A DNA stretch of 64,000 nucleotides, taken from Phallusia mammillata. Its lineage: Eukaryota. How positions within the stretch are numbered: position 1 is the first letter of the stretch; the number at the start of each line of letters is the position of its first letter. Shown here in pieces: positions 19,475 to 53,359 of this stretch. Under the pieces are notes generated by a model that had not been told where the DNA came from, made no database searches, and saw nothing but the letters and a program-made list of their open reading frames with translations. Where the stretch lies: the NCBI GenBank assembly GCA_965637545.1, contig OZ281497.1, positions 5,394,001 through 5,458,000 of the forward strand, in the 5' to 3' direction. A program made the position numbers and the translations under genes.

Positions 19475-21870
19475 TTACGGCGAACTTTCTTTCTTTCGTT
19501 TGTGCTTCTTTGAATGTTTTTTAGAACCATCGCGTTCAGATCGTTTTGATTTTTTCGACTTTCTTTCCTCGTCATGTTTGTCTTTGTTTTCGTTTTCGTT
19601 TTTTGATTCACGAGACCTTTTGCGATCATCTGAATAATCACGAGACCGACGAAAATCACTCTTTTCACGTTTGTGATGGAACTCACGCCTCGAAGTTTCA
19701 TGATCTCGACGAGATCTACTGTTTAATGACACCTCTCGGTCCGCCGATTTTCGTGACTTAGACTGTTTATGACCGAGATCATGACGCCTTTGTTCAAGTA
19801 ACAAAGAAGAACCTTGTTCTTTTACAGATGAACTATCACGTGATTGTGAACTATTATGTTTGCCCCATACATCAGAAGTTTGATTTGATGCGCTTTCTTC
19901 TTGACTAGAAATACAACATGGGTAAAACTTTTTTAACTTTCACAAAAAAGTTACTCAGTCAGTTGCAACAAACCATAGATCAAAACAAGCCTTACAAATG
20001 ACTTAAAAAAGTTCAATGCCAGATCGAAAATCATAGTTACCCGTTAAGCAATCAATACCCATTAAACAGTCACAACATACCTTTCATTGTTCCACAATTG
20101 TCGTAACTCCTCCATATGAACCTGAAGCACATCTCGGAATATCTACAGTAAAAATGTTTTTAAATCAAACCCCCTAGCCTAAACCAATGTTATTTTTTTT
20201 TAAATCAGTGATTTGGGCCACAGTTTTTAAAGTGCTTAATCTAACCTGAGCAAATAGTGTGACTTGGCATAAGTACTGTCAGTAAAAGACAGGCTTGGTT
20301 TGAGTTTTAATGTTTGTGCATAAAGGGTTTAACATGACTTATTTCCATGTAATTGTCTTAATTCTTACCAAAAAATAAAGCTCTGTAATATTCAACTGCT
20401 AAACATAAATTAGCCAACTAGTTTACTTCACAAATATTTTGTATTCTGTTTACAATTATAAATAAAACAATCAACAACATACAACTCTATAAAAAAAACA
20501 GTTTATTACCTCAGTTTGTGTTCGCTTTGTGATGTGAACATTCTTCGCTCTGTAAGTTTGTCGCCGGCGTTTGTGGTCTCGCTGCTCTTTTAATCTTGCT
20601 AGTTCTGAAGCTGGGAGCACATCTACAAATAAACACACATACAAAACTATCACTGTTACTCCTGTGGACTTTTTGGACAACTGGGAAACTACTGGGTCTG
20701 TGGAGTCAATTGAAACAGGTGATAAGCCAAATCACTACCAAGCAAAAATCTATCAAAGTTTTGAATGTGTTCGCTTCATAAAAAAGGAACAAAAATGCTA
20801 ATAAATTACAATAATCATTTTGTTCACATTTATTTAAAAATGTATTTTTAGGCTAAGTACATTAACAAGATAAAACACAGGATCAAAATGCAACAGTACC
20901 TGTTGATGACTTGGAAATTTCAAATCCCTCAGTCTGAAGATCTGTTAGTAATGACAAATCAGTGGTAGATTTCTTCAGTTTGAGTCTCTCCAATATCTGA
21001 TCATATACTTCTAATCGCTCTTCTCTTGACAAAGTGCTGACATAAGCTTCATAGGTTCTTAATGGTGGTAAACCAGGAGCAACCTTTGACACAATGTCAT
21101 CTGTAATCAATATAAAAGATGTTGTAAAGAGCAAAAAGGTAGCTTCAATAATCTATTTTATTCAATGAATATAATACCCAAGTCAGTCAATCTAGTTAAA
21201 TATCAAATTCTTTTTAACTACCAAGGTAATGAAATGCTCATTGTAAAAATACTACTAACATCATGCTTGCCTCTTCCGCTACACCCGTTTTGTTTTTTTT
21301 TGGCTTAAGTAAAAGCAAACTAAGTGCATGTTTATTTTGAAAATGGCATTTAAAGTACAACCTATACACTTTTAATAACAAATCAGAAAGAATTTTTCAA
21401 CACCTATTTCAACACAAGGATATGGAAATTCAGCATTTTCTTCCTCAATAATGTCTCTGCTTTCTTGGACAGAATATCCATGGGTTCTCCACTTGCATGT
21501 TTGACAGTGTTTGTCAAATCTTTTTACAAAATACAGAAACATTTATAAATCATTTTATCAAAAAAATGATTTCAATACACTGAATATTACTAAACATGTT
21601 TTGCAGGGTAATTATTCTAAGTTTAGGGCACAATAAATGCAGTTAGATTCAGATTGGTTCAATAACTCAAATAAGCAATATCATGTACGTTTCGTACTTT
21701 GCTTGTCATTTACCTTACCTCTGGGGTGGTATTGTATGGTGTTTGTTATACGGGCACAGTACAAACTTATCATGTTGTTTGATTGTCGGGTGCCATTGCA
21801 AAGTATCTTGAAATTTCTGAACAATTTGTTTGGCTTCCTTGATAAAGTCTGATAATTCATTATCTGCCAT
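19475..21870 (-). CDS. SNRNP48: U11/U12 snRNP 48-kDa protein (multi-exon)
   Basis: Exon 1 (21870-21719) plus exon 2 (21519-21404) give the CHHC zinc finger CPYNKHHTIPPQRFDKHCQTC. Later exons give LSREERLEVYDQI and QRDHKRRRQTYRAKNVHITKRTQTEV, diagnostic of SNRNP48. The gene ends in an R/K/S/D-rich tail at 19475. Confidence 0.93.
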
Positions 21871-22661
21871 ACAATCCACTTTGGCTGATTTACTTTTTCC
21901 CCAAAGTGAACCGAAAGTTACCGAAACATTTGTCTTCGTTTTTGCAGTTACGTCACAATTGCACTGCTACGCGTTTAGGTAATTTCCCATCTACAGATAT
22001 CTCAATCGTATCTACAAAAATCAACAATCAAATTTTTCAACAAATCAACAAATGTGGCGTTTTGATTGTCATTTATTGTTTTCAAAACTACAACGTCTTG
22101 TAATGTTCGTGCTAAATCAACAAATTTTCCCGACTGTGGTTCATTTGTTGTTGTTTTTCTGATTTTGGGTTCCAGAATTAGTTGTTTTCTTCAAACAAAT
22201 GGGAACTGAAAATTCGCGTCAACGCATCACATGTAATCTAAAGACATTTTCGTTACAGCACGAAAACAAGAAACTTGCGACTGAACATTTCGCATGGCAC
22301 ATGCGTCACGATTTCATCACTGCCAGACGTTACTCAATGAAGCGCTACAAAGGTAGAGAAAAACTAAAAAGCACAGTTTCGGTTGAAAATACTTGTTTGG
22401 TAGATTTCTTTTGCGAAATTGGCAGATACGATACAGTGTCTTCTTAAAAAAAACCTTTAACGTTGCAATAATTTGCAGTCAGGCAGGAGATGAAATGTAG
22501 AATTGAGGGAATATACACTGAGATTTAACATTGAAATTAAATACGTTTTTTTCTTTTTCAGCAGTACACAAAACAATAATTTACCCTTGCATGACATTCA
22601 CCGATAGCTTATAGGCGGAATATTTGTGTACAGAGGTATATGCTAATCGAATGTTAAAATT
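21871..22661. promoter_or_regulatory. Short divergent intergenic region shared by SNRNP48 and NTase-TPR copy A1
   Basis: The two ATGs face away from each other ~790 bp apart. The part from ~22216 on is conserved upstream of the other array copies and includes a polypyrimidine-AG site at 22560-22561. Confidence 0.55.
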
Positions 22662-25442
22662 ATGGAACTGAAAAAGAACGAACAAGAATTGACTGACCAG
22701 TTGAGAGGTTGTTGTAGCTTGGAAAATGGGTTTTACATCGAAGATAACACAGAGGAGTCTGCTGCCGCTATGATTGAGTTATCCCATTATTACTATGCAA
22801 TACTCAGTGAGGAAAAGCGGAACTACCTTTATGCCGCTGGCCTTCTTGCTGCAGCCAAAGTACGCCTTTCCAACGATAACGTTACAGACGGTTTTATGTT
22901 GAAATTGTGGAAAGAACTTCTGGCAGACAGCGGTGCTAAAAATACTGACATAGATTTGTTCTCAATTATAGCTGATTTAAAGGAAAAGGTTTCAAAAATG
23001 CGTAATCTTGTTGAAAAACAAATTGCAAATATTCCCTATGTTACAGAGAACGGAACTAAGTTCTTGCAGGAACAAAAAAAGATTGATGCTACAAAAAAAG
23101 TATTTATATACTGTAATGAAAACTACATAGATATTATGCGGTACATATCTGATGAAATCAGTCAAATTTTGTTCGACTCTCAGTTGCCTTGTGAGTTTGC
23201 TCACTTGGTTTTCGGGTCAGTGGCTCGTATGGAAGGCAGTCCGTTTTCTGATTTCGAAAACGCTATTATTATCTCAGAACGTACTGACGAGATCTTAGAA
23301 AAATTTCAATTCTACATCGTTTTGTTTCAGTTCGTGATTATCAATCTGGGGGAAACACCCTTACGTTTGTTGGGAATTCCCTTACTCAATGATTTCTACA
23401 GTGATCGCAAATCCAAGGATTGGTTCTATGACAAATTTACTTGTCTCGGTATCCGGTTTGACAGCAACATGCCCGCAGCTTCGGTGCATCCCCTCTCTCG
23501 AGACCCGACCGCCGACAAACCTTTCAAAGTTGAGCTGATCGGCACCGTGAACGAAATCGCGCGTTTCTTAGAACACGACCAAGCTCTGCGCAATGGATAT
23601 CACTTGGCCGATGTGCTGAGCCGATCGCGTTTGGTGGCAGGAAATTTCAAACTGCATGAAAAATACAGAACGCAGGTGGATGAGAAACTTCGCATGAGCC
23701 AAGACTGGATTCGGGAGCGGATAAAGAACTGCATGGAAACGCTTGATGGCTCCGATGAGCTGTGTAAGCCTTTCAGTAAGCAGAACATAAAGCTCCTTGT
23801 TTACAGGGGCATATCGGTTACCATCAGCCACTTGGGCAACTTGTTCGGTGTTCGTAGCTCGTCTTGTTTTGATATTGTGGACGAGCTGGTTGAAAGTGGT
23901 CGGTTGCCAGAAGAGGCCGGTCACAATCTCAAATACGCAGTGGCTTTAGCTGGAGAAATCCGACTAAAGATTTACATGGCAGCCGGTGAGCAAGTCCCAG
24001 AGACAGACTTGGTTACGAAGGAAGACGGAAAAGCAATGTCAGATATTATCAACGCTGTTGGGAACGTAAGCATTTGTGATTATTTTTACATTGCACAGAC
24101 GCTGTGGCGTGATTTACATCCATTCGTAATGCAAGAATCTACAAGTATATCATTCTCATCGGAACCATACGTCGACCCTGCTATGCGCTTTGCAATTCAA
24201 ACCATTTTGCTCGGTAAACCTGAAGAAAAAGAAAACTTTCGACTACTTAAACACAGCGAAGAACATGACCACTTTGACAAGATATCTTTTCTTCAAATTG
24301 CCAGAACACTCACCAAGCTTCTGTTGACAATATTTGAATCTTTCGATGCAGTGTTAAAGCATAAACAATCTTCCAAAGTTTTCCACACTAAAGAAGACCT
24401 CATTTGGAAAATCGAACACTTGAAAAAGATGTTTGCTACCTGCACCGCGCTGTTTGCTGATACTTACACTTCAACAAACGCCCCGCAATTAGGCCTTGAC
24501 ACAACGCTTTTCGCGGAGCAAAAATATGCTTATAAGGACTACAAGAGAGCTATGGAAAACCTGCAAACATTTCTAAAAGCATCGTTAAAAGATGTCCGGT
24601 TGATTCACCTGTTACCGTCTGTTGTCTACACTCTTCATTGCGTGGCAGATTTAGTGTCGTCCTTTAACCGAAAAATGACTTCGTGTTTAGAAAATCCGGC
24701 TACTTACAACACGGAGCAGTTGTTGAATGAACTTGACTACATTTCAACGGCGATTGATGGTTTTGTCATGGCATTACCGGAAAAAGAAGTAGATTTAAAA
24801 ATATATCTCGAAAGTCAAGAATTGGTTCGCCGAGTAGTTCTTGATTTCGATGATGGGTTGTTTAGCAACGAAGGTTTGGCAATCGGGATAAACAGATGGC
24901 TGGAACAAATCAAAGACATAAAGGCTATGATTTTAATTGCTGAACAAATCCCCATCTTTCATGAAAAGATCAACGGGGTGATGAAGTTCTTTTTCAACAT
25001 CAATAATTGGTCGTTTGTTATGCCTGCCTACAGCAAAGTTGTCAGAAGAGATTTAAAAATCCTCATCGCCGAAGTGAAATCCACGCGTGGTGAGCTGCTT
25101 TCCCGAAACGGCGATTATGCACTTGCCACGGAGGATTTGTGCACCTCTCATCGGATTTTAACTGAAAACCCCCGCGAGAAAGTTTGGTTTGAATTGAAAG
25201 TGGCGGCAAATATGCACAACATCGGTAAAAGCCTTTGCTCCTGTAAAAAATTCACTGAAGCACTGACATGGTTTCGTAAAGAGCTCGACCACAGGCTTAG
25301 TAAATTACCGACGAAAACTGGCAAAGAGCATTTGGGCCCGAACTATCACTTCCAAGCGAAATGTCTTCGTGCCATCGGAACAGATGAAGCTTTGGCGGAA
25401 GCTGACATTTACTTTGAGAACGAAATGGAGCTTTTTTTTTAA
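22662..25442 (+). CDS. NTase-TPR protein copy A1, intact, 926 aa, no introns in the CDS (DUF294/GlnD-GlnE-like nucleotidyltransferase with C-terminal TPR-like repeats)
   Basis: Uninterrupted ORF. VFGSVARMEGSPFSDFENAIII fits hGSx(10)DhEh (G185, S186, D197, E199), with GIRFDSNM (D267) downstream. A helical domain follows (IKLLVYR...L...G.L...LKYAVALAGEIRLKIYM), then TPR-like helices (STRGELLSRNGDYALATED; NMHNIGKSLCSCKKFTEALTWFRKEL). Confidence 0.9.
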   Translation: MELKKNEQELTDQLRGCCSLENGFYIEDNTEESAAAMIELSHYYYAILSEEKRNYLYAAGLLAAAKVRLSNDNVTDGFMLKLWKELLADSGAKNTDIDLFSIIADLKEKVSKMRNLVEKQIANIPYVTENGTKFLQEQKKIDATKKVFIYCNENYIDIMRYISDEISQILFDSQLPCEFAHLVFGSVARMEGSPFSDFENAIIISERTDEILEKFQFYIVLFQFVIINLGETPLRLLGIPLLNDFYSDRKSKDWFYDKFTCLGIRFDSNMPAASVHPLSRDPTADKPFKVELIGTVNEIARFLEHDQALRNGYHLADVLSRSRLVAGNFKLHEKYRTQVDEKLRMSQDWIRERIKNCMETLDGSDELCKPFSKQNIKLLVYRGISVTISHLGNLFGVRSSSCFDIVDELVESGRLPEEAGHNLKYAVALAGEIRLKIYMAAGEQVPETDLVTKEDGKAMSDIINAVGNVSICDYFYIAQTLWRDLHPFVMQESTSISFSSEPYVDPAMRFAIQTILLGKPEEKENFRLLKHSEEHDHFDKISFLQIARTLTKLLLTIFESFDAVLKHKQSSKVFHTKEDLIWKIEHLKKMFATCTALFADTYTSTNAPQLGLDTTLFAEQKYAYKDYKRAMENLQTFLKASLKDVRLIHLLPSVVYTLHCVADLVSSFNRKMTSCLENPATYNTEQLLNELDYISTAIDGFVMALPEKEVDLKIYLESQELVRRVVLDFDDGLFSNEGLAIGINRWLEQIKDIKAMILIAEQIPIFHEKINGVMKFFFNINNWSFVMPAYSKVVRRDLKILIAEVKSTRGELLSRNGDYALATEDLCTSHRILTENPREKVWFELKVAANMHNIGKSLCSCKKFTEALTWFRKELDHRLSKLPTKTGKEHLGPNYHFQAKCLRAIGTDEALAEADIYFENEMELFF

Positions 25443-25472
25443 AACTTCACTGAAGAAAACTCCGCTTTTAAA

Positions 25473-25602
25473 CACGTGTTTTACGTTTTGTGCTGTTACA
25501 CGTGTTTTACGTTTTGTGCTGTTACACGTGTTTTACGCTTTGTGCTGTTACACGTGTTTTACGCTTTGTGCTGTTACATGTGTTTTACGCTTTGTGCTGT
25601 TA
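25473..25602 (+). repeat. 26-bp minisatellite, 5 units, just after the A1 stop
   Basis: Unit cacgtgttttacg(c/t)tttgtgctgtta; 130 bp = 5 x 26. Confidence 0.95.
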
Positions 25603-26760
25603 GGAGATTAGAAAGTTTTCAGCAAGATGCAGTTTTTTTGAAAAAATCATGACATCGTTAGTGCTCTAATTTCGTTATTTGTGATCCGAAGTAGTTTCAC
25701 AATCACATTGAAAGTTTACATGACCACACCACAATACAGCCAAATATAGTTTTGTGTGCAAAGCTTTTAGTGTGTAAAGTGTGTACTGTTAACAAATATA
25801 TAGTGTTATATTATATGCCCTGGCAAGTTGAAAAACAATGGTCTAAACTTCAAAACGCTTGACTCTATTTATTGACTTTTATCCTTGGTGCAAAAAATGT
25901 CACCGTGTATATAAAGTATTTAAGTTGTATTGATTTGAAAATTAATCATTATTTGCTATGAGATGACTTTTGCGATTTCCATTGAAAAGCGTTTTGAGGA
26001 CATGATCAGTGGAAAAGTGACTACTTTTTTGTTCTTCGGTACCGTATCTCTATTACAACCAACTTTTGATTGTATATGCTGGTGCTTTTAGCGTTTTAGC
26101 TTAGGTGTGTTCTGCCTTCGAATAGATTTGCACAACTGAATTGTTTTTCACCAGGAATCTGACCATTGTAGCTTAATTTGTCGAGTTTAATCACAAGTAA
26201 TTAGTCAATCGATTATTGTCTATATAGCTGTTTTTCTGTTACATGTTGAAAAATTCGCAATCTGTCTTAATATGTTCGTCTACAACGGCTATAGCTTTTC
26301 GCTTTTTGATATTATACAAAGTTTATCAGAAAGAATCGGGAGAGATTTTGATCAACTTTCCCAGACAGACTACAACAGGAATTGTTTCTGCGCTGCAAGC
26401 AGTAGGCTTAAAGCTGTACTGTACTCCCCAAACAAGTATGGTGTGTAAAACGTATCAAAGCAAGTCTTCCATTTTACCACCTCGATGGCGTTGCGAATAA
26501 ACATTCTCATTCCAATTTCCGTGCATATCTCGGGCTAGTTTAACCCGATGTAACAATTTCGCAAACAAGATTGGAAGTCCAACCAATATGACCCGCGTCG
26601 GCGGTGACTTTCACTGTCCACTCTATGCATGGTTTAAGACAGTCGATCGCATCTTCGTATAACTTTAAAATGACCACAGCATGAGATTTGAAGTCTACAA
26701 CAGAGTTATAAGTCGGGCCGGGCTTTTTGGGCCGGGTTGCTGTCTGGTGTTTGTCTAGAC

Positions 26761-27072
26761 CAGTGGTTCTTAACCTTTTTTCTGTTGTTACCCACAAAAT
26801 TACCCCTTTTTAGAAAAACATCACCTAATATAGCTTGCAATCCAAAATAAACCCACAGAAAAACAAAGTCATTATTTATTGTACATTTAAAGGTTCATTT
26901 CAAATGCAGTTAATGGGAAGGGTGATACTGCTTTTTAGCTACTAAGCATGTAAATCTGATTATTATGATTATCAAGAATCTAAAGATAACTATAACAGAA
27001 AATCTATGTTACCCCTTTTAAAATGCCAAATTACCCCTTTGGGGGTAATTACCCACAGGTTAAGAACCACTG
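26761..27072. mobile_element. hAT-type MITE, 312 bp, present only in unit 1
   Basis: TIR cagtggttcttaacc / ggttaagaaccactg; 8-bp TSD gtctagac at 26753-26760 and 27073-27080. The matching sites near 39290 and 51915 lack the element. Confidence 0.92.
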
Positions 27073-27523
27073 GTCTAGACTGAATTTTAACAATCATGTA
27101 AACATCACACTTCGTGTACAGCATTTATTGTCATAAATCCTCGCGGTCAAGTGGCTAAAGATACGTGGACAAGACGCTACACGACATCAAACCGGATACA
27201 TACGTAAAACAACGGTAAAAAACACATACACACGGCACACTTTAACACCACATGTTTGTTCGCAGTACACACTTTGCACACTAACAACTTGAGCATAGTT
27301 GAATAAATTTCTTTTCGATTTTATTGTTTGTAAAACTGCTTTGGTTAACAACTTAGGCCAAATTAGACTTCTAAAGTTCCCTTGCACACCCGTATTTTTC
27401 GCAAGACTAAACATGAATTCTCCAAAAACTACTTTTTCGCTGAACACTTGTTATTATCTCACGACACCATGGATATGATCTTATTTGATATTTCAATGAA
27501 AATGGTATCTTGTCGATGGTATG

Positions 27524-30304
27524 TTACAACAAAAACAACTCCATTTCGCTTTCAATGTAGATGTCAGCTCCCGCCAAAGCTTCATCTGTTCCGATGGCAC
27601 GAAGACATTTCGCTTGAAAGTGATAGTTAGGGCCCAAATGCTCTTTGCCAGTTTTCGTCGGCAATTTACTAAGCCTGTGGTCAAGCTCTTTGCGAAACCA
27701 TGTTAGTGCTTCAGTGAATTTTTCGCAGGAGCAAAGGCTTTTACCGATGTTGTGCATATTTTCTGCCACTTTTAATCTAAACCAATCTTTTTCGCGTGAG
27801 ATTTCAGTTAAAATCCGATGAGCGGTGCACAAATCCTCCGTGGCAAGTACATACTCGCCGTTTCGGGAAAGCAGCTCACCGCGCGTGGATTTCACTTCGG
27901 CGATGAGGATTTTCAAATCCCTTTTGACAACTTTACTGTAGACAGGCATAATAAACGACCAATTATTGATGTCGAAAAAGAACTTCATCATTTTGTTGAC
28001 CTTTTCATGAAAGATGGGAATCTGTTCAGCAATCAAAATCATAGCCTTTATGCTTTTAATTAGTTGCAGCCATCTGTTTATCCCGATTGCAAAACTTTCG
28101 CTGCTAAACAACCCATCTTTTATATCACCAACGACTCGGCGAACAAATTCCTGACTTTCGGCATATATTTTCAAATCTACTTCTTTTTCCGGTAATGTCA
28201 TGACAAAACCATCAATCGCTGTTGAAATGTCGTCAAGTTCATTCAACAACTGCTCCGTGTTGTTAGTATCCGAATTTTCTAAACACGAATCCATTTTTCG
28301 GTTAAAAGCCGACACTAAATCCGGCACGCAATGAAGAGTGTATACAACAGACGGTAACAGGTAAATAAACCTGACATCCTTCAACGATGCTTTGAGAAAC
28401 GTTTGTAGGTTTTCCATGGCATTCTTATAGTTCCTGTAAGCACCTTTTTGCTCCGCGAAAAGCTTTTTGTCAAGGCTCTGGTGAGGGGCTGTTGAAGTAT
28501 ACGTTTCAGCGAACAGCGTAGTGCAGGCAGCAAACATCTTTTTCAAGTTTTCGATTTTCCAAATGAGGTCTTCTTCAGTGTGGAAAAGTTTGGAAGCTTG
28601 TTTATGCTTTAACACTGCATCGAAAGATTCAAATATTGTTAACAGATGCTTGGTGCCTGTTCTGGCAATTTGAAGAAAAGATATCTTGTCAAAGTGGTCA
28701 TGCTCTGTGTTCTCTTTCAGTCGTTGAAAGTTTCCCCTTTCTCCGGGTTTACCGAGCAGATTGGTTTGAATCGCCAAGCGCATTGCAGGGTCGATGGCCC
28801 TTTCTGATGAAAAGGATATACTTGAAGATTCTTGCATTACAAATGGATGTAAATCACGCCACAGCGTCTGTGCAATATAAAAATGATCACAAATGCTCAC
28901 GTTGCCAACAGCGCTGATAATATCCGACATTTCTTTTCCGTCTTCGTTCGTAACCAAGTCTGTCTCTGGGACTTGCTTACCGGCTGCCATGTAAATCTTT
29001 AGTCGGATTTCTCCAGCTACAGCGACTGCGTATTTGAGATTGTGACCGGCCTCTACCGGCAATCGACCACTTTCAACCATCTCGTCCACAATATCAAAAC
29101 AAGACGAGCTACGAACACCGAACAAATTGCCCAAGTGGCTGATGGTCACCGATATGCCTCTGTAAACAAGGAGCTTTATGTTTCGTTTACTGAAAGGTGT
29201 ACATAGCTCATCGGCGCCATCAAGCGTTTCCATGCAGTTCTTTATCCGTTCCCGAATCCAGTCTTTGCTCGTGCGAAGTTTCTCATCCACCTGCGTCCTG
29301 TATTCCTCATGCAGTTTGAAACTTCCTGCCACCAAACGCGATCGGCTCAGTACATCGGCCAGGTGATATCCATTGCGCAGAGCTTGGTCGTGTTCTACGA
29401 AACGTGCGATTTCGTTCACGGTGCCTATCAGCTCAACTTTGAAAGGTTTGTCGGCGGTCGGGTCTCTCGAGAGGGGATGCACCGAAGCTGCGGGCATGTT
29501 GCTGTTAAACCGGACGCCGAGACAAGTAAATTTGTCGTAAAACCAATCCTTGGATTTGCGATCACTGTAGAAATCATTGAGCAAAGGAATTCCCAGCAAG
29601 CGTATGGGTGTTTCTCCTAAGTTGATAATCACGAATTGAAACAAAACAATGTAGAATCGAAATTGTTCTAAGATCTCGTCAGTACGTTCTGAGATAATGA
29701 TGGCATTTTCGAAATCAGAAAACGGACTGCCTTCCATACGAGCCACTGACCCGAAAACCAAGTGAGCAAACTCACAGGGTAACTGAGAGTCGAACAAAAT
29801 GTTACTGATTTCACAAGATATGTACCGCATAATATCTATGTAGTTTTCATTACAGTATATAAATACTTTTTTTGTAGCGTCAATCTTTTTTTGTTCCTGC
29901 AAGAACTTATTTTCTTTCTCTTTAACTTTGGGAATATCAGCAATTTGTTTTTCAACAAGCTTTCGCATTTTCGAAACTTTCTCCTTTAACTCAGCTACAA
30001 TTGTGAATAAACCAACCTCGGTATTTTTAGCACCGCTTTCTGCCAGAAGTTCTTTCCACAATCTTAACATGAAACCGTCTGTGACGTCATCGTTGGAAAG
30101 ACGTACTTTGGATGCGGCAAGAAGGCCAGCGGCGTAAAGGTAGTTCCGCTTTTCCTCACTGCGTATTGTGTAGTAATAATGAGACAATTCGATCATAGCG
30201 GCAGCAGACTCTCTTGTGTTATCTTCGATGTAAAACCCATTTTCCAAGTAACAACAACCTCTCAACTGGTCAGCCAATTCTTGTCCGGTCTTGTTTGGTT
30301 CCAT
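27524..30304 (-). CDS. NTase-TPR protein copy B1, intact, 926 aa; Asn at candidate catalytic position 267
   Basis: Uninterrupted ORF colinear with A1, with the same GS...DFE motif. It reads GVRFNSNM where the other copies covering this region read RFDSNM (AAC vs GAC near 29505). Confidence 0.9.
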   Translation of the reverse strand: MEPNKTGQELADQLRGCCYLENGFYIEDNTRESAAAMIELSHYYYTIRSEEKRNYLYAAGLLAASKVRLSNDDVTDGFMLRLWKELLAESGAKNTEVGLFTIVAELKEKVSKMRKLVEKQIADIPKVKEKENKFLQEQKKIDATKKVFIYCNENYIDIMRYISCEISNILFDSQLPCEFAHLVFGSVARMEGSPFSDFENAIIISERTDEILEQFRFYIVLFQFVIINLGETPIRLLGIPLLNDFYSDRKSKDWFYDKFTCLGVRFNSNMPAASVHPLSRDPTADKPFKVELIGTVNEIARFVEHDQALRNGYHLADVLSRSRLVAGSFKLHEEYRTQVDEKLRTSKDWIRERIKNCMETLDGADELCTPFSKRNIKLLVYRGISVTISHLGNLFGVRSSSCFDIVDEMVESGRLPVEAGHNLKYAVAVAGEIRLKIYMAAGKQVPETDLVTNEDGKEMSDIISAVGNVSICDHFYIAQTLWRDLHPFVMQESSSISFSSERAIDPAMRLAIQTNLLGKPGERGNFQRLKENTEHDHFDKISFLQIARTGTKHLLTIFESFDAVLKHKQASKLFHTEEDLIWKIENLKKMFAACTTLFAETYTSTAPHQSLDKKLFAEQKGAYRNYKNAMENLQTFLKASLKDVRFIYLLPSVVYTLHCVPDLVSAFNRKMDSCLENSDTNNTEQLLNELDDISTAIDGFVMTLPEKEVDLKIYAESQEFVRRVVGDIKDGLFSSESFAIGINRWLQLIKSIKAMILIAEQIPIFHEKVNKMMKFFFDINNWSFIMPVYSKVVKRDLKILIAEVKSTRGELLSRNGEYVLATEDLCTAHRILTEISREKDWFRLKVAENMHNIGKSLCSCEKFTEALTWFRKELDHRLSKLPTKTGKEHLGPNYHFQAKCLRAIGTDEALAGADIYIESEMELFLL

Positions 30305-33612: not shown

Positions 33613-35139
33613 GATCATAAAATCATACCATCGACCTAAAACAATCATTTTGTTAAACCAGTTTTTTACCTTTTGAGTAGTGAGAGAATATAGCACTTGT
33701 TTAGCGAAAACATTGTTATTGAAAAACTCACCTGTTTTCTTGGGTTCAAGGGAACGTTATAAAAGTCCAAATTGGTCCTGGTTGTTAACCAAAGCAGTTA
33801 CAAAACCACAACCAAGTCAAAAAGTACATATTTTATTATGTTTAATTTTTTGTGTGCAAAGTGTGTGCTGTGAACAAATGTGTAGTGTTAAAGTGTGTCG
33901 CAACTTAAAAATGTTGGGACAACTGTTCAAATAGCTAAAACGCTTTAATCTATTCATTTAATTTCCCCCTTTCACCTTAGTGTAGTTGTTTCTTTGCTTT
34001 CAAAACTCCAACGTTTTTGCAAAATATACATATTTTGTCGACAGTAGTTTATCTGTAGTTGTGTTCATTCCCAGGGTTGTCGTATTCACGAACTAAAAAA
34101 AACAACAATTGACTTTTTAATTACTTTTCAACGCAAAGCAACTCGTTAAATAAGACGTTTGAATACTTTCACGTATTGAGCTGTGCAAATTCTGCATTAT
34201 TGTCGACGTGACTGCTGAATAATGTGGCACACACCTTTACAAGTCCATAAACAAATACGACGTCCATATGGAAATTAGAATAAAAAGTTTGCGTCACCTT
34301 ATCACACGCAATCTGAAGACATTTATGTTACAGCACGAAAACACCAAACTGGAGACAGGACACTTCGCATAGCACAAGCGTCACGATTTCATCACCGCCA
34401 GTCGCTATTCAATGAAGCGCTACGAAGGCAGAGGGAACCTCAAAACCACAGGTTTCGGTTCTCAAGCAGTCAGGCATGGCGCTGAAGTTGAAAAGGCTTG
34501 TTCAGTATAGGTTTCGTTTGCGAAGTTGGCAGATAAGATATGGTGTAGAAACAAAATATCAAAAGTTGTAGGAAAGACATGACAAGGCAGCTTGCAATGC
34601 ATTTTAATGGTGCTGCACGTAAATACTCAATAAACCAAGTAGTTTTAGCGGTTTGCTTAACATGAAATTATACATAGACAGGAATAGATTTCGAACCTTA
34701 ACAACAAACTTCTAAACAACACCTCGGGTGTATGGAAAATTATCAAGTGTACGTTGAAATACCTGAACGTCTATGAAATTTGTCACACAGATTTGTTAAT
34801 GTAGTATTATTAGCAATCCGGCCTTTGAATGAAAAGACACAACTAACACAGAGTAGGGACAGGTGCGTCTTAGTGTCCACTCTTGTCCATGTAAGACTAT
34901 ATTCTAAACCAATTGTTATTGGAATTCGAACCTGCAGTTTCGGTTTCGATTGATTTAGCTTGAAGTATGAAATGTAGAATTAAGTTGGAATGTAAACTTA
35001 GCTTTAACTTTGAAAGTAAATACGGTTTATCTTTTTCAGCAGGAAACAAAAACAGTAATTTACTCTTGCACGACCTTCGCCCACAGCTTATTGTGAGGAC
35101 ATTTCTGTACAGTGGTTTTGCTATTTGAATGTTAAAACT

Positions 35140-38133
35140 ATGGAACCAAAAAAGAACGGACAAGAATTGGCTGACCAGTTGAGAGGTTGTTGTTACTTGG
35201 AAAATGGGTTTTACATCGAAGATAACACAGAGGAGTCTGCTGCCGCTATGATCGAGTTATCCCATTATTACTATAAAATACGCAGTGTGGAAAAGCGGAA
35301 CTACCTTTACGCCGCTGGTCTTCTCGTGGCAGCCAAAGTACGCCTTTCCAACGATGACGTTGCAGACCGTTTTATGTTGAAATTGTGGAAAGAACTTCTG
35401 ACAGACAGCGGTACTAAAAATACTGAGATTGATTTGTTCTCAATTGTAGCTGAGTTAAAGGAAAAAGTTTCGAAAATGCGAAAACTGGCTGAAAAGCAAA
35501 TTGCAAATATTCCCAAAGTTACAGAGGAAGGAAACAAGTTCTTGCAAGAACAAAAAATGATAGATGCTACAAAAAAAGTATTTATATACTGTAATGAAAA
35601 CTACATAGATATTATGCGGTACATATCTAATGAAATCTGTCAAATTTTGTTCGATTCTCAGTTGCCCTGTGAATTTGCTCACTTGGTTTTCGGGTCAGTG
35701 GCTCGTATGGAAGGCAGTCCGTTTTCTGATTTCGAAAACGCCATTATTATCTCAAAACGCAGTGACGAGACCTTAGAACGATTTCGATTCTACATCGTTT
35801 TGTTTCAATTCGTGATTATCAACTTAGGAGAAACACCCGTACGCTTGCTGGGAATTCCTTTGCTCAATGATTTCTACAGTGACCGCAAATCCAAGGACTG
35901 GTTCTATGACAAATTTACTTGTCTCGGCGTCCGGTTTGACAGCAACATGCCCGCAGCTTCGGTGCATCCCCTCACGAGAGACCCGACCGCCGACAAACCT
36001 TTCAAAGTTGAGCTGATAGGCACCGTGAACGAAATCGCGTGTTTCTTAGAACACGATCAAGCTCTACGCAATGGATATCACTTGGCTGATGTACTGAACC
36101 GATCGCGTTTGGTGGCAGGAAATTACAAACTGCATGAGGAATACAGGACGCAGGTGGATGAGAAACTTCGCATGAGCAAAGACTGGATTCGGGAACGGAT
36201 AAAGAACTGCATGGAAACGCTTGATGGCGCCGATGCGCTGTGTACGTCGTTTAGTAAGCAAAACATAAAGCTTCTTGTTTACAGAGGCATATCGGTTACC
36301 ATCAGCCACTTGGGCAACTTGTTCGGTGTTCGTAGCTCGTCTTGTTTTGATATTGTGGACGAGCTGGTTGAATGTGGTCGATTGCCAGTAGAGGCCGGTC
36401 ATAATCTCAAATACGCAGTCGCTTTAGCTGGAGAAATCCGACTTAAGATTTACATGGCAGCCGGTGAGCAAGTCCCAGAGACAGACTTGGTTGCAAAGGA
36501 AGACGGAAAAGAAATGTCAGATATTATCAGGGCTGTTGGGAACGTGGGCATTTGTGATCATTTTTACATCGCACAGACGCTGTGGCGTGATTTGCATCCA
36601 TTTGTAATGCAAGAATCTACAAGCATATCGTTCTCATCAAAACCAAACATCGACCCTGCCCTGCGCTTTGTAATTCAAACTATTCTGCTCGGTAAACCCG
36701 AAGCCTGAAGAAAACGGAAACTTTCGACTACTTAAAGACAGTGAAGAACATGACCACTTTGAAAAGATATCTTTTCTTCAAATTGCCAGAACAGGCACCA
36801 AGCTCCTGTTAACAATATTTGAATGTTTTGATGCAGTGTTAAAGCATAAACAAGCTTCCAAACTTTTCCACACTAAAGAAGACCACATTTTGAAAATCGA
36901 ACACTTGAAAAAGATATTTGCTACCTGCACCACACTGTTTGTTACACTTCAAAATACGCCCCGCAATTAGGCATTGACACAAAGCTTTTCGCGGAGCAAA
37001 AATATGCTTATAAGGACTACAAGAGAGCTATGGAAAACCTACAAACATTTCTTAAAGCATCGTTAAAAGATGTTAGGTTGATTCACCTGTTACCGTCTGT
37101 TGTCTACACTCTTCATTGTGTGGCGGATTTCGTGTCGTCCTTTAACCGAAAAATGGCTGCGTATTTGGAAAATCCGGATACTAACAAAATCATGCAGTTG
37201 TTGAATGAACTTGACGACATTTCAACGGCGATTGATGGTTTTGTCATGACATTGCCAGAGAAAGAAGTAGATTTGGAAATATACGTCGAAAGTCAAGAAT
37301 TGGTTCGCCAAGTCGTTTTGGGTTTCGATGATGGGTTGTTTAGCAACGAAGGTTTGGCAATCGGGATAAACAGGTGGCTGGAACAAATCAAAAACATAAA
37401 GGCTATGATTTTAATTGCTGAACAGATTCCCATCTTTCATGAAAAGATCAACGGGGTGATGAAGTTCTTTTCCGACATCAATAATTGGTCGTTTGTTATG
37501 CCTGCCTACAGCAAAGTTGTCAGAAGAGATTTAAAAATCCTCATCGCCGAAGTGAAATCCACGCGCGGTGAGCTGCTTTCCCGAAACGGCGAGTATGTAC
37601 TTGCCACGGAGGATTTGTGCACCGCTCATCGCATTTTAACTGAAAACCCCCGCGAGAAAGTTTGGTTTGAATTGAAAGTGGCGACAAATATGCACAACAT
37701 CGGTAAAAGCCTTTGCTCCTGTAAAAAATTCACTGAAGCACTGACATGGTTTCGTAAAGAGCTCGACCACAGGCTTAGTAAATTACCGACGAAAACTGGC
37801 AAAGAGCATTTGGGCCCGAACTATCACTTCCAAGCAAAATGTCTTCGTGCCATCGGAACAGATGAAGCTTTGGCGGAAGCTGACATTTACTTTGAGAACG
37901 AAATGGAGTTTTTTTTAAAAAACTTCACTGAAGAAAACTCTGCTTTTAAACACGTGTTTTACGTTTTGTGCTGTTACACGTGTTTTACGCTTTGTGCTGT
38001 TACACGTGTTTTACGCTTTGTGCTGTTACACGTGTTTTACGCTTTGTGCTGTTACACGTGTTTTACGCTTTGTGTTGTTACACGTGTTTTACGCTTTGTG
38101 TTGTTACACGTGTTTTACGCTTTGTGCTGTTAG
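35140..38133 (+). pseudogene. Copy A2: full-length locus broken by a +7-nt insertion (~36700, stop at 36706-36708) and a -7-nt deletion (~36941)
   Basis: Compared with A3: aaacccgaagcctgaagaa vs aaacctgaagaa, and ctgtttg-ttacac vs ctgtttgctgatacttacac. The 3' ORF reads into the minisatellite and ends ...ALCC*. Confidence 0.85.
37951..38132 (+). repeat. 26-bp minisatellite, 7 units, within the A2 reading frame
   Basis: 182 bp = 7 x 26. Confidence 0.95.
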
Positions 38134-46260: not shown

Positions 46261-47787
46261 GATCTTAAAATCATACCATCGACCTAAAACAATCATTTTG
46301 TTAAACCAGTTTTTTACCTTTTGAGTAGTGCGAGAATATAGCACTTGTTTAGCGAAAACATTGTTATTGAAAAACTCACCTGTTTTCTTGGGTTCAAGGG
46401 AACGTTATAAAAGTCCAAATTGGTCCTGGTTGTTAACCAAAGCAGTTACAAAACCACAACCAAGTTAAAAAGTACATATTTTATTATGTTTAATTTTTTT
46501 TGTGCAAAGTGTGTGCTGTGAACAAATGTGTAGCGTTAAAGTGTGTCGCAACTTAAAAATGTTGGGACAACTGTTCCAATAGCTAAAACGCTTTAATCTA
46601 TTCATTTCATTTCCCCCTTTCACCTTAGTGTAGTTGTTTCTTTGCTTTCAAAACTCCAACGTTTTTGCAAAATATACATATTTTGTCGACAGTAGTTTAT
46701 CTGTAGTTGTGTTCATTCCCAGGGTTGTCGTATTCACGAACTAAAAAAAACAACAATTGACTTTTTAATTACTTTTCAACGCAAAGCAACTCGTTAAATA
46801 AGACGTTTGAATACTTTCACGTATTGAGCTGTGCAAATTCTGCATTATTGTCGACGTGACTGCTGAATAATGTGGCACACACCTTTACAAGTCCATAAAC
46901 AAATACGACGTCCATATGGAAATTAGAATAAAAAGTTTGCGTCACCTTATCACACGCAATCTGAAGACATTTATGTTACAGCACGAAAACACCAAACTGG
47001 AGACAGGACACTTCGCATAGCACAAGCGTCACGATTTCATCACCGCCAGTCGCTATTCAATGAAGCGCTACGAAGGCAGAGGGAACCTCAAAACCACAGG
47101 TTTCGGTTCTCAAGCAGTCAGGCATGGCGCTGAAGTTGAAAAGGCTTGTTCAGTATAGGTTTCGTTTGCGAAGTTGGCAGATAAGATATGGTGTAGAAAC
47201 AAAATATCAAAAGTTGTAGGAAAGACATGACAAGGCAGCTTGCAATGCATTTTAATGGTGCTGCACGTAAATACTCAATAAACCAACTTGTTTTAGCGGT
47301 TTGCTTAACATGAAATTATACATAGACAGGAATAGATTTCGAACCTTAACAACAAACTTCTAAACAACACCTCGGGTGTATGGAAAATTATCAAGTGTAC
47401 GTTGAAATACCTGAACGTCTATGAAATTTGTCACACAGATTTGTTAATGTAGTATTATTAGCAATCCGGCCTTTGAATGAAAAGACACAACTAACACAGA
47501 GTAGGGACAGGTGCGTCTTAGTGTCCACTCTTGTCCATGTAAGACTATATTCTAAACCAATTGTTATTGGAATTCGAACCTGCAGTTTCGGTTTCGATTG
47601 ATTTAGCTTGAAGTATGAAATGTAGAATTAAGTTGGAATGTAAACTTAGCTTTAACTTTGAAAGTAAATACGGTTTATCTTTTTCAGCAGGAAACAAAAA
47701 CAGTAATTTACTCTTGCACGACCTTCGCCCACAGCTTATTGTGAGGACATTTCTGTACAGTGGTTTTGCTATTTGAATGTTAAAACT

Positions 47788-52286: not shown

Positions 52287-53359
52287 TCACAAAAACAACT
52301 CCATTTCGCTTTCAATGTAGATGTCAGCTTCCGCCAAAGCTTCATCTGTTCCGATGGCACGAAGACATTTCGCTTGAAAGTGATAGTTCGGGCCCAAATG
52401 CTCTTTGTCAGTTTTATGCGGTAATTTACTAAGCCTGTGGTCAAGCTCTTTGCGAAACCATGTTAGTGCTTCAGTGAATTTTTTACAGGAGCAAAGGCTT
52501 TTACCGATGTTGTGCATATTTTCTGCCACTTTTAATCTAAACCAATCTTTTTTGCGTGAGATTTCAGTTAAAATCTGATGAGCGCAGCACAAATCCTCCG
52601 TGGCAAGTACATAATCGCCGTTTCGGGAAAGCAGCTCACCGCGTGTGGATTTCACTTCGGCGATGAGGATTTTCAAATCCCTTCTGACAACTTTGCTGTA
52701 GGTAGGCATCACAAACGACCAGTTATTGATGTCGAAAAAGAACTTCATCACCTTGTTGACCTTTTGATGGAAGATGGGGATTTGTTCAGCAATTAAAATC
52801 ATAGCCTTTACGTTTTTGATTTGTTCCAGCCATCTGTTTATCCCCATTGCCAAACCTCCGTTGCTAAACAACCCATTATCTATACTATGAACTACTTGGT
52901 GAGTAAATTCTTGACTTTCGACATATATTTTCAAATCTACTTCTTTCTCTGGCAATGTCATAATAAAACCATCAATCGCCGTTGAAATGTCGTCAAGTTC
53001 ATGCAGAAATCGCTCCGTATTGTTGGCATCCGTATTTTCTAAATAAGAAGCCATTTTTCGGTTAAAAGACGACACGAAATCCGCCACGCAATGAAGAGTG
53101 TAGACAACAGACGGTAACAGACTAATCAACCTAACATCCTTTAACGATGATTTAAAAAATGTTTGTAGGTTTTCCATAGCTCTCTTGTAGTCCCTGTAAG
53201 CATCTTTCTACTCCGCGAAAAGCGTTATGTCAAGGTCATGAGGGGCGTTTGTTGAAGTGTACGTATCAGCAAACAGCGCAGTGCAGACAGCAAACATCCT
53301 TTTCAAGTGTTCGATTTTCCAAATGAGGTCTTCTTTAGTGTGGAAAACTTTGGAAGCTT
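52287..53359 (-). pseudogene. Copy B3, 3' part (separated from its 5' part by a transposon)
   Basis: The C-terminal 296 aa are identical to B2. Homology stops at ttggaagctt|cactgtaaa (53359/53360). Confidence 0.9.

What the first reader, a model, noticed from the sequence alone, without database searches (positions are those of the whole stretch)
22662..30304. Intron-free, bacterial-style architecture beside intron-rich host genes suggests horizontal origin
Seen: the 2.8-kb CDSs have no introns, while the neighbours (two b561 genes, SNRNP48) have exons of ~70-330 nt. Known: NTase followed by a helical substrate-binding domain is the GlnD/GlnE/DUF294 layout of bacteria and differs from cGAS/OAS. 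Inference: the family may have come from a bacterium (I recall similar NTase-TPR proteins in intracellular bacteria but cannot verify it here) and then expanded. Retroposition of an older host gene is the alternative.
Basis: partly seen in the sequence, partly recalled or inferred. Interest (0 to 1): 0.7.

Follow-up and report, generated by a model that had tools for sequence, protein, structure and literature searches.

The report
Bacterial-type AMPylase genes in a sea squirt
Two intact, intron-free genes in a sea-squirt-like genome encode a protein-tagging enzyme of a bacterial type (the fold of Legionella DrrA and E. coli GlnE); their whole-length relatives occur only in a few marine invertebrates and in bacteria that live inside eukaryotic cells, so the gene crossed between the domains long ago, most likely from bacterium to animal, though the tree does not settle the direction.

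Summary
Window 22662-25442 (+) and 27524-30304 (-) are uninterrupted 926-aa ORFs, 87% identical. They lie beside spliced host genes: two cytochrome b561 genes split into exons, and a GT-AG-spliced gene seen in RNA contigs.

The protein is a GlnE/DrrA-type nucleotidyltransferase. It aligns to DrrA at Z 27.3, has the motif G185-X11-D197-x-E199, and carries a helical, TPR-like arm. This genome holds at least 55 copies, all read as single open frames. The local copies arose by tandem segmental duplication and are under purifying selection (dN/dS about 0.27).

Whole-length relatives were found in:
- Ciona, Clavelina, Branchiostoma (hundreds of copies) and one octocoral;
- obligate intracellular bacteria: Midichloriaceae including Jidaibacter, Holosporaceae, and Neochlamydia NEX2 by the literature.

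Ordinary bacterial DUF294 and GlnD lie far away.

An inter-domain transfer is therefore well supported, and it is ancient, not recent. The animals form one clade (UFBoot 90), with bacterial lineages at its base. AU tests, however, cannot reject reciprocal monophyly or a tunicates-first topology. A bacterial origin is favoured (about 0.55) but not shown.

Amphioxus and coral homologues have introns, mostly outside the enzyme-TPR core. Retroposition is not supported. Earlier notes of this scan describe the same family elsewhere in this genome.

The parts
22662..25442 (+). Copy A1: intact intronless gene, 926 aa, GlnE/DrrA-type nucleotidyltransferase plus helical TPR-like arm
   Evidence: ORF. 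Pfam DUF294. AlphaFold model with residues 1-510 at pLDDT about 90. DrrA Z 27.3, GlnE Z 25.3 and 24.6.
27524..30304 (-). Copy A2: intact intronless paralogue, convergent with A1, 87% identical
   Evidence: dN/dS against A1 is 0.27.
22776..24146 (+). Residues 39-495 of A1: the adenylyltransferase fold (polymerase-beta-type catalytic core plus helical substrate-binding domain)
   Evidence: VIA-align model range 39..495 against DrrA 14..347, 325 residues aligned, rmsd 3.8. Foldseek E 5.6e-7.
23214..23258 (+). Catalytic motif G185-X11-D197-F-E199 (G-X11-[DE]-X-[DE] of GS-ATase/DrrA)
   Evidence: G185, S186, D197 and E199 are invariant in the 34-sequence alignment A1. The motif is defined in PMC8097203.
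24624..25439 (+). Residues 655-926 of A1: TPR-like helical repeat arm; the faster-evolving half of the protein
   Evidence: Weak TPR_12/TPR_10 hits below cut-off. LGN/Pins/KLC TPR domains at Z about 14. dN/dS 0.33-0.43 against 0.13-0.19 for the enzyme core. The model is poor for residues 518-787.
22490..26751 (+). Duplicated DNA unit: the gene with about 170 nt upstream and about 1.3 kb downstream, repeated at 34967-39281 and 47615-51903 (93% identity, period about 12.6 kb)
   Evidence: blastn of the region against the window.
35125..38133 (+). Broken copy (several in-frame stops; two ORF pieces, 35125-36708 and 37030-38133)
   Evidence: One search reports 84% identity with 6 TGA and 3 TAA inside.
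39665..42439 (-). Copy with one in-frame TAG (longest ORF 813 aa)
47773..50763 (+). Intact copy, 90% identical to A1, with a longer C-terminal tail
52287..53384 (-). C-terminal fragment of a copy (residues about 561-925, one TAG)
57352..58749 (-). N-terminal fragment of a copy (residues 1-414, plus a piece of 520-573)
21000..21979 (-). Spliced host gene next to A1 (SNRNP48-like): exons 21000-21100, 21404-21519 and 21719-21979, with GT-AG introns
   Evidence: RNA contigs of runs X1 and X2. Weak zf-U11-48K hit.
5117..7432 (+). Cytochrome b561 gene split into at least three exons
   Evidence: PF03188 matches exon by exon.
14659..15622 (-). Second cytochrome b561 gene split into at least three exons
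   Evidence: PF03188 matches exon by exon.

Best explanation
The two ORFs are functional members of a large intronless gene family. The protein has an N-terminal half (residues about 39-495) with the GlnE/DrrA adenylyltransferase fold and an intact G-X11-D-x-E metal-binding motif. Its C-terminal half is a faster-evolving helical, TPR-like arm.

By analogy with GlnE, GlnD and DrrA, the enzyme most likely transfers AMP, or another NMP, from an NTP to a hydroxyl of a target protein, with the arm choosing the target or sensing a ligand. This function is inferred, not shown.

Origin: the whole gene (N-terminal helices, enzyme and TPR arm) is shared between a few marine invertebrate lineages and obligate intracellular bacteria. 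It is far from every ordinary bacterial DUF294 or GlnD. It therefore crossed between the domains once, long ago, before the ascidian lineages of Ciona, Clavelina and this species split.

The most likely direction is from an intracellular bacterium into an early animal lineage. Lineage-specific expansion followed, here by tandem segmental duplication of a unit of about 12.6 kb. The single-exon state is an inherited family trait, kept for a very long time. It is not a mark of recent arrival.
For: Fold and motif:
-.

Functional genes:
- dN/dS is 0.25-0.30 overall and 0.13-0.19 in the enzyme core.

Family size and intron state:
- At least 55 matches (129 candidates) on contigs C1-C7 of this genome.
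- All 14 deeply diverged paralogues I fetched are single ORFs of 759-1157 aa.

Bacterial relatives:
- Midichloriaceae MAG and Holosporaceae 'Namur', with the same NTase, DUF294_C and TPR_12 layout and a SidM_N hit.
- Jidaibacter and a Rickettsiaceae MAG.
- 13 and 18 matches in genomes of 1.7 and 1.9 Mb.
- Only 8 of 301 sampled genomes of that order have a match.
- Bacterial gene context for P0112/P0118 and P0279: shikimate kinase, pirin, MetRS.
- Bacterial P0112 is 33% identical to amphioxus P0271 over 874 aa, across all three parts of the protein.

Gap to the rest of the superfamily:
- In 400 evenly sampled Pseudomonadota, only motif-level hits appear, at E 1e-5 to 1e-8.

Tree (LG+C20+F+G4 PMSF, 84 rows, outgroup DUF294/GlnD):
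- Animals form one clade, UFBoot 90, in 94% of 200 bootstrap trees.
- The ingroup bacteria are never a single clade in those bootstrap trees.
- P0112, then P0279+P0277, are sister to the animals.

Age:
- The clade of win_o3 holds Clavelina P0003 and Ciona P0051 at 99/99.

Single-exon core elsewhere:
- Clavelina is intronless and Ciona has one C-terminal intron.
- Coral P0312 and amphioxus P0104 have the enzyme in one exon.

Segmental duplication:
-.
Against: The tree does not fix the polarity.
- On 48 rows, reciprocal monophyly, animals plus P0112, and tunicates-first differ by 0.4 lnL or less under LG+F+G4.
- Under LG+C20+F+G4 they differ by about 6 lnL, with reciprocal monophyly best. None is rejected (p-AU 0.65, 0.39, 0.36).
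- A first, thinner tree put the bacteria next to amphioxus and inside the animals.
- The outgroup branch is very long (about 2.7 changes per site), so the root is fragile.

Other points against:
- Intracellular bacteria are known to capture eukaryote-like genes, and their versions carry Ank, F-box or OTU domains.
- In bacteria the family is patchy (8 of 301 genomes).
- One amphioxus gene (P0086) has three introns inside the enzyme domain.
- No enzymatic activity, substrate or clear expression was shown. RNA contigs give only short fragments at 95-99% identity, which may come from paralogues.
- Absence from other animal phyla rests on word-limited searches.
Confidence: 0.55

Rival explanations
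1. Transfer in the opposite direction. The enzyme-TPR family arose and expanded in marine animals or another eukaryote. Intracellular bacteria (Rickettsiales, Holosporaceae, Neochlamydia) then captured a copy as a host-mimicking effector and spread it among themselves.
For: - Bacterial carriers are few and all host-dependent (8 of 301 genomes).
- Their versions are fused to eukaryote-like Ank, F-box or OTU modules.
- The first tree placed all bacteria as one well-supported clade (SH-aLRT 98) beside amphioxus.
- The tunicates-first topology is not rejected.
Against: - Every other branch of the GlnE/GlnD/DUF294/DrrA superfamily found here is bacterial, so this route needs two transfers.
- With denser sampling the animals are one clade in 94% of bootstrap trees, and the bacteria are never a single clade in them.
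- Known hosts of the named carriers (Acanthamoeba for Jidaibacter) are not animals that have the family.
Confidence: 0.25
2. Retroposition. An older, intron-bearing host gene was copied through mRNA, which gave the intronless family.
For: - The coding sequence is intronless.
- Amphioxus and coral homologues have introns.
Against: - No split, exon-by-exon parent appears among the 55 matches in this genome. All long matches are contiguous.
- Paralogues only about 21-30% identical full-length (32-43% over the enzyme domain) are all single ORFs.
- Clavelina is also intronless.
- The local copies share about 170 nt upstream and 1.3 kb downstream non-coding DNA, which points to DNA-level duplication.
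- Intron positions differ between the amphioxus paralogues P0086 and P0104, and mostly lie outside the enzyme-TPR core.
Confidence: 0.07
3. Vertical descent. This is an ancient eukaryotic gene lost from most lineages, with no inter-domain transfer.
For: - It is present in a cnidarian as well as in chordates.
- There is a weak lead to a DUF294 cluster labelled Ciliophora.
Against: - Named hits come only from Branchiostoma, Ciona, Clavelina and Dendronephthya.
- Bacterial proteins are as close to amphioxus (33-45% identity) as amphioxus is to tunicates, which vertical descent since the last common ancestor cannot give.
Confidence: 0.05
4. Artefact. Bacterial contamination or a mis-join in the assembly.
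For: None was found.
Against: - The copies sit on seven of the assembly's large (25-36 Mb) contigs among spliced genes.
- Read-derived contigs span the junction with the neighbouring spliced gene.
- GC content is host-like at 39-42%.
- The nearest bacterial protein is only about 25-29% identical.
Confidence: 0.01

Closest known systems
Legionella pneumophila DrrA/SidM N-terminal AMPylation domain (PDB 6yx5, 3nku)
   Same: Best structural match: Z 27.3, with 325 of 339 residues aligned. It has the same G-X11-[DE]-X-[DE] motif. It is an effector of an intracellular bacterium. Some family members hit Pfam SidM_N.
   Different: Only 13% identity. DrrA carries GEF and PI4P-binding domains after the enzyme, not a TPR arm. 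The target of the animal proteins is unknown.
E. coli glutamine synthetase adenylyltransferase GlnE (PDB 1v4a, 3k7d), GlnD, and Pfam DUF294/DUF294_C
   Same: Same two-part layout: polymerase-beta-type nucleotidyltransferase plus helical substrate-binding domain. Z 25.3 and 24.6. DUF294 scores above its cut-off.
   Different: Sequence similarity is limited to the motif region (E 1e-5 to 1e-8). There is no second catalytic domain and no ACT, HD, CBS or cNMP domain. A TPR-like arm is added.
Neochlamydia NEX2 family (F-box, sometimes OTU, then DUF294, then TPR; Domman et al. 2014, PMC4209131) and the Midichloriaceae, Jidaibacter and Holosporaceae NTase-TPR proteins
   Same: Same enzyme-plus-TPR core, also expanded to tens of copies per genome. 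Homology runs the full length of the protein.
   Different: The bacterial versions have canonical TPR_12/TPR_10 arrays and often Ank, F-box or OTU heads. The two window genes have a degenerate helical arm and no such head. I did not obtain NEX2 sequences, so their place in the tree is untested.
Amphioxus NTase-TPR expansion (UniProt 'Protein-PII uridylyltransferase N-terminal domain-containing protein')
   Same: Same family. It is also a large lineage-specific expansion.
   Different: The amphioxus genes have introns, long canonical TPR arrays, and in some models extra PGRP, CARD or Sushi domains. They are 30-35% identical to the tunicate clade.
Metazoan AMPylases FICD and SELENOO
   Same: Same presumed chemistry: transfer of AMP to protein side chains.
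   Different: The folds are unrelated (Fic; pseudokinase). Reviews list only these two for metazoans (PMC8097203 and PMC8668991).

Membership tests
GlnE/DrrA-type adenylyltransferase (polymerase-beta nucleotidyltransferase superfamily; Pfam DUF294 + DUF294_C) | Motif G-X11-[DE]-X-[DE] on the catalytic sheet | tested here: met
   G185, 11 residues, then D197-F-E199. G185, S186, D197 and E199 are invariant in 34 sequences. The motif is as given in PMC8097203.
GlnE/DrrA-type adenylyltransferase (polymerase-beta nucleotidyltransferase superfamily; Pfam DUF294 + DUF294_C) | Catalytic core followed by the helical substrate-binding domain, superposable on solved members | tested here: met
   DrrA Z 27.3 (325 residues aligned, rmsd 3.8). 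GlnE Z 25.3 and 24.6. Foldseek probability 1.00. The model has pLDDT about 90 over residues 1-510.
GlnE/DrrA-type adenylyltransferase (polymerase-beta nucleotidyltransferase superfamily; Pfam DUF294 + DUF294_C) | Profile match above the curated threshold | tested here: met
   PF03445 scores 23.1 bits against a cut-off of 21, over the motif region only. This is marginal. No PDB match by sequence.
GlnE/DrrA-type adenylyltransferase (polymerase-beta nucleotidyltransferase superfamily; Pfam DUF294 + DUF294_C) | NTP-dependent nucleotidylylation of a protein substrate | not testable with these tools
   Needs biochemistry.
TPR repeat proteins | Pfam TPR match above threshold, and a TPR superhelix | tested here: inconclusive
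   TPR_12 and TPR_10 score 14-16 bits, below cut-offs of 27-30. LGN and KLC TPR domains reach Z about 14 over 655-926, a level common for helical repeats. Residues 518-787 are poorly modelled. Other paralogues and relatives have clear TPR_12.
Horizontally acquired gene of bacterial origin | Closest relatives outside the host's group are bacterial, and the wider superfamily is bacterial | tested here: met
Horizontally acquired gene of bacterial origin | Patchy distribution in the recipient kingdom | tested here: inconclusive
   Named hits come only from Branchiostoma, Ciona, Clavelina and Dendronephthya. The searches are word-limited, only 120 of 521 hits were listed, and no animal genomes other than this one could be scanned.
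Horizontally acquired gene of bacterial origin | Recipient sequences nested inside donor diversity with support | tested here: inconclusive
   Animals form one clade at 90/52, with bacterial sisters at 88/53 and 65/83. The alternatives are not rejected by AU tests.
Horizontally acquired gene of bacterial origin | Physically integrated in the host chromosome, not contamination | tested here: met
   Spliced neighbours and read contigs spanning the junction. Copies on seven contigs of the assembly.
Retrogene | Intron-bearing parental gene; copy limited to the mRNA; poly(A) tract and target-site duplications | tested here: not met
   No split parent in the genome. Copies share non-coding flanks on both sides. 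Poly(A) tracts and target-site duplications were not examined.
cGAS/OAS/Mab21 nucleotidyltransferases | Mab21/OAS fold or profile | tested here: not met
   No such Pfam hit. None among the structural matches listed.

The most novel reading that the evidence does not exclude
A DrrA/GlnE-type protein-AMPylating effector with a TPR arm passed from an intracellular bacterium, a relative of today's Rickettsiales- or Chlamydiae-like symbionts, into an early marine animal. It was domesticated and then amplified to tens or hundreds of fast-diversifying copies in ascidians, amphioxus and octocorals. On this reading it is a third, so far unrecognised class of metazoan AMPylase, working as a sensor-enzyme family in host-microbe conflict.
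Probability: 0.4. Interest if true: 0.75.

Novelty: new variant of a known kind. Interest (0 to 1): 0.6.

Why it matters
Reviews of protein AMPylation list only FICD and SELENOO as animal enzymes (PMC8097203, PMC8668991). Here, a third kind of AMPylase fold, previously tied to bacterial nitrogen control and to a Legionella effector, is present and under purifying selection in invertebrate chordates, in very large numbers.

The same whole gene is amplified in obligate intracellular bacteria. This makes a concrete and testable case of gene exchange between animals and their intracellular bacteria. It also offers a way to learn what these bacterial 'eukaryote-like' TPR effector families (for example Neochlamydia NEX2) actually do.

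For the narrow question asked: intron-free architecture beside intron-rich genes did point to a real inter-domain transfer. The transfer is old, and its direction still needs a better-rooted tree.

Tried and rejected
- Sequence search of the PDB found nothing at E up to 1.
- PADLOC found nothing for the window protein. Relatives gave only weak hits to unnamed candidate families.
- NCBIfam gave only sub-threshold GlnD and MntA motif hits.
- Cluster look-up gave no names for the metagenomic relatives.
- The exhaustive profile search gave counts (2472 representatives at E up to 1e-3, 780 at up to 1e-30). Its 150 listed hits were all close tunicate-type proteins, so it added no bacterial or outgroup diversity.
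- The first tree (96 rows, quick search) put all bacteria in one clade beside amphioxus. Denser sampling around P0112 and P0279 changed this, so I do not rely on it.
- The AU test on the 84-row PMSF data did not finish. An LG ultrafast-bootstrap run on 84 rows did not converge in the time allowed. I used a 48-row subset instead.
- An attempt to name the bacterium that carries the homologues closest to the animal ones failed. Its MetRS is 33% identical or less to 151 sampled genomes of the Midichloriaceae MAG's order.
- Expression: the runs that the tool guesses to be RNA, and that do show the spliced neighbour, hold only fragments of 70-366 nt on and near the ORF. These are at 95-99% identity and may belong to paralogues. 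Transcription of these two copies is therefore not shown.
They were examined exon by exon with family models only.
Full report
WHAT IS THERE

The window is G000:C4:5394001-5458000 of a 240-Mb animal assembly. At 22662-25442 (+) and 27524-30304 (-) lie two uninterrupted ORFs of 926 aa each. They are convergent and 87% identical along their whole length.

They belong to a local cluster. Further copies, broken or fragmentary in most cases, lie at:
- 35125-38133 (+, several stops);
- 39665-42439 (-, one TAG);
- 47773-50763 (+, intact);
- 52287-53384 (-, C-terminal piece);
- 57352-58749 (-, N-terminal piece);
- smaller pieces elsewhere.

The repeated DNA unit includes about 170 nt upstream and about 1.3 kb downstream of the gene. 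Window 22490-26751 matches 34967-39281 and 47615-51903 at 93% identity, with a period of about 12.6 kb. The cluster therefore grew by segmental tandem duplication, not through mRNA.

THE NEIGHBOURS ARE SPLICED

The Pfam cytochrome b561 model matches two genes exon by exon. One is at 5117-7432 (+) and the other at 14659-15622 (-). In each, three consecutive parts of the profile are separated by non-matching DNA.

Directly upstream of the first ORF, contigs of two runs (X1, X2; the tool only guesses them to be RNA, and I take them as RNA because they carry these spliced joints) show a minus-strand gene. Its joints are at 21100/21404 and 21519/21719, each with GT..AG ends when read on the minus strand. 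The only basis for calling it SNRNP48 is a 23-bit zf-U11-48K hit.

No joint lies inside the ORF in any run. Read-derived contigs span the region from the spliced neighbour into the ORF (21000-22746). I built no joined spliced model of the neighbours.

WHAT THE PROTEIN IS

Pfam gives a marginal DUF294 hit over the catalytic motif (23.1 bits, cut-off 21) and sub-threshold TPR hits near the C-terminus.

An AlphaFold model built on a 34-sequence alignment is confident for residues 1-510 (pLDDT about 90) and poor for 518-787.

Structural matches for the confident half:
- Legionella DrrA AMPylation domain: Foldseek E 5.6e-7; VIA-align Z 27.3, with 325 of 339 residues aligned at rmsd 3.8, model residues 39-495.
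- The two homologous domains of E. coli GlnE: Z 25.3 and 24.6.
- No cGAS, OAS or Mab21 chain is listed.

The motif that defines GS-ATase and DrrA, G-X11-[DE]-X-[DE] (PMC8097203), is present as G185...D197-F-E199. It is invariant in the alignment. Residues 655-926 resemble LGN, Pins and KLC TPR domains at Z about 14, a level that is common for helical repeats.

Among the four intact close copies, dN/dS is 0.25-0.30 overall. It is 0.13-0.19 in the enzyme core and 0.33-0.43 in the C-terminal half. These are working protein-coding genes, with a conserved enzyme and a faster-changing arm.

The mechanism I commit to is NTP-dependent nucleotidylylation, most likely AMPylation, of a protein target selected by the C-terminal arm. 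This is an inference from fold, motif and the chemistry of GlnE, GlnD and DrrA. Nothing here tests it.

THE FAMILY IN THIS GENOME AND IN OTHER ANIMALS

This genome has at least 55 matches (129 candidates) on contigs C1-C7. Nearly all lie in open frames of about 800-1170 aa. I fetched fourteen paralogues, thirteen of them only 20-30% identical full-length (31-43% over the enzyme domain) and one 87% identical; all are single ORFs of 759-1157 aa.

Word-based protein searches found named relatives only in:
- Clavelina lepadiformis and Ciona intestinalis;
- several Branchiostoma species, in very large numbers;
- one octocoral, Dendronephthya gigantea.

They also found many unnamed proteins on long, gene-poor, retrotransposon-bearing contigs that are evidently eukaryotic. 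The exhaustive profile search counted 2472 representatives at E up to 1e-3 and 780 at up to 1e-30.

Intron state varies:
- Clavelina P0003 is intronless.
- Ciona P0051 has one intron near residue 892.
- B. lanceolatum P0086 has seven coding exons, with three introns inside the enzyme domain.
- B. lanceolatum P0104 has four exons, with the enzyme and the TPR array in the last one.
- Dendronephthya P0312 has four exons, with the enzyme in one of them.

The intron positions checked are not shared, and they mostly lie outside the enzyme-TPR core.

THE BACTERIAL RELATIVES

A scan of one genome per bacterial and archaeal species, using the conserved peptide of the family, found two loci. One is in a Candidatus Midichloriaceae MAG and one in Holosporaceae 'Namur'. 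Both encode proteins of 1076 and 1295 aa with the layout enzyme, DUF294_C, TPR_12/TPR_10. The Holosporaceae protein also hits SidM_N.

Searching from the bacterial side added Candidatus Jidaibacter acanthamoeba, a Rickettsiaceae MAG and more unnamed contigs. The two genomes, of 1.7 and 1.9 Mb, carry 13 and 18 matches.

The family is nevertheless rare in bacteria:
- Only 8 of 301 sampled genomes of the MAG's order have a match at E up to 1e-10, some of them inside large chromosomal contigs.
- In 400 evenly sampled Pseudomonadota, nothing but motif-level hits (E 1e-5 to 1e-8) to ordinary DUF294 and GlnD proteins appears.

Two further contigs have plainly bacterial gene content: shikimate kinase, pirin, MetRS and GIY-YIG, densely packed. 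They encode the bacterial proteins closest to the animal ones (P0112, P0118, P0279). P0112 is 33% identical to amphioxus P0271 over 874 residues, covering the N-terminal helices, the enzyme and the TPR array.

The literature describes the Neochlamydia NEX2 family of 50 proteins with the layout F-box, sometimes OTU, then DUF294, then TPR (PMC4209131).

PHYLOGENY

I extracted the enzyme domain with a profile and built trees rooted on ordinary DUF294 and GlnD proteins.

A first, thinner set (96 rows, quick search) gave a tunicate clade, a single bacterial clade and amphioxus next to the bacteria. I then added the sequences found from P0112.

The careful tree (84 rows, LG+C20+F+G4 PMSF) gives:
- one animal clade (UFBoot 90, SH-aLRT 52; present in 94% of 200 bootstrap trees);
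- bacterial P0112, and then P0279+P0277, as successive sisters to it (88/53 and 65/83);
- the other bacterial lineages in a basal near-polytomy;
- no bootstrap tree in which the ingroup bacteria form a single clade.

Within the animals, the tunicate clade is solid (100/100) on a long stem of 0.95. The subfamily of the two window genes includes Clavelina and Ciona members (99/99). The family is therefore older than the divergence of these ascidians.

On a 48-row subset I compared three backbones:
- reciprocal monophyly;
- animals plus P0112;
- tunicates first, which nests the bacteria inside the animals.

They differ by at most 0.42 lnL under LG+F+G4 (p-AU 0.46-0.53). Under LG+C20+F+G4 they differ by about 6 lnL, with reciprocal monophyly best (p-AU 0.65, 0.39, 0.36). 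The tree therefore favours a single animal clade with bacteria at or below its base, but it does not fix the polarity.

READING

An inter-domain transfer of the whole gene is well supported. The evidence is full-length homology at 25-45% identity between animals and intracellular bacteria, a large gap to all other members of the superfamily, and patchy occurrence on both sides.

I put bacterium-to-animal at about 0.55, for three reasons:
- The rest of the superfamily found here is bacterial.
- The animals form one clade while the bacteria do not.
- The single-exon enzyme-TPR core is the commoner state across the animal lineages checked.

The reverse direction (about 0.25) stays open for three reasons:
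- The bacterial carriers are few, and all are host-dependent.
- Their proteins carry eukaryote-like heads.
- The tunicates-first tree is not rejected.

Retroposition (about 0.07) is disfavoured. There is no split parent gene, and the duplication carries non-coding flanks. Vertical descent with massive loss and an assembly artefact are both unlikely.

The family is bacterial in type and shared with intracellular bacteria. However, being intron-free here reflects an old family trait and not a recent arrival, and the nesting criterion is met only weakly.

RELATION TO EARLIER NOTES OF THIS SCAN

Several earlier notes on other parts of this genome describe the same family and the same DrrA/GlnE fold, and mention invertebrate chordates and octocorals. 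My results agree.

- the verified set of intracellular-bacterial relatives;
- the intron survey across animals;
- the segmental mode of local duplication;
- dN/dS values;
- explicit topology tests of the horizontal-origin claim.

LIMITS

- Animal genomes other than this one could not be scanned directly.
- Only 120 of the 521 hits were listed.
- NEX2 sequences were not obtained.
- The outgroup branch is very long.
- The ultrafast bootstrap had not fully settled (correlation 0.989).
- Expression of these two copies is not shown.

Noticed in passing
window 26713-26900: Summed contig depth jumps about 100-fold in both DNA-like runs (X5 about 14,770; X6 about 52,560, against 100-700 nearby), with many loose ends at 26756-26831. 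This looks like a very high-copy repeat between the two convergent genes.
   Followed up: no
window 34967-39281, 47615-51903 and onward (period about 12.6 kb): The cluster is a higher-order tandem repeat. Each unit holds one forward copy, one inverted copy and the same small fragments: matches to 24637-25438, 27233-27400 and 22209-22384 recur in every unit.
   Followed up: partly
window 47773-50763: This otherwise intact copy (90% identical to A1) runs on past the usual stop, to 996-1018 aa. An earlier first-reader note (s1-351799) attributes the tail to loss of the stop codon into a 26-bp minisatellite. I did not test that.
   Followed up: no
G001 (Midichloriaceae MAG) contig C17, 14888-42020; L017: Seven or more same-strand NTase-TPR genes stand in a row, with gaps of about 100 nt, in a 1.7-Mb bacterial genome. 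G002 (Holosporaceae) has 18 matches. The family is amplified in the bacteria too.
   Followed up: partly
P0340, P0346, P0351, P0098, P0331 (Branchiostoma proteins): Some amphioxus gene models join the NTase-TPR core to peptidoglycan-recognition (PF01510), CARD (PF00619) or Sushi domains. This hints at an innate-immune role. The models were not checked for mis-fusion of neighbouring genes.
   Followed up: no
L049:12029-13705 (-), MetRS beside bacterial P0279: The bacterium that carries the homologues closest to the animal ones has a MetRS 33% identical or less to all 151 sampled genomes of the Midichloriaceae MAG's order. It belongs to some other, unidentified group. It comes from the same run series as L046.
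   Followed up: partly
ESM Atlas clusters: One DUF294 cluster of about 290-aa proteins is labelled mostly Eukaryota, commonest Ciliophora. One TPR-DUF294 cluster is all Bacteria, commonest Chlamydiota. These are leads on wider distribution that were not followed.
   Followed up: no
L048:13694-20858: The unnamed eukaryotic contig that carries P0365 has Pao/BEL-type retrotransposon genes (RVT_1, integrase) directly downstream of the intronless NTase-TPR ORF.
   Followed up: no
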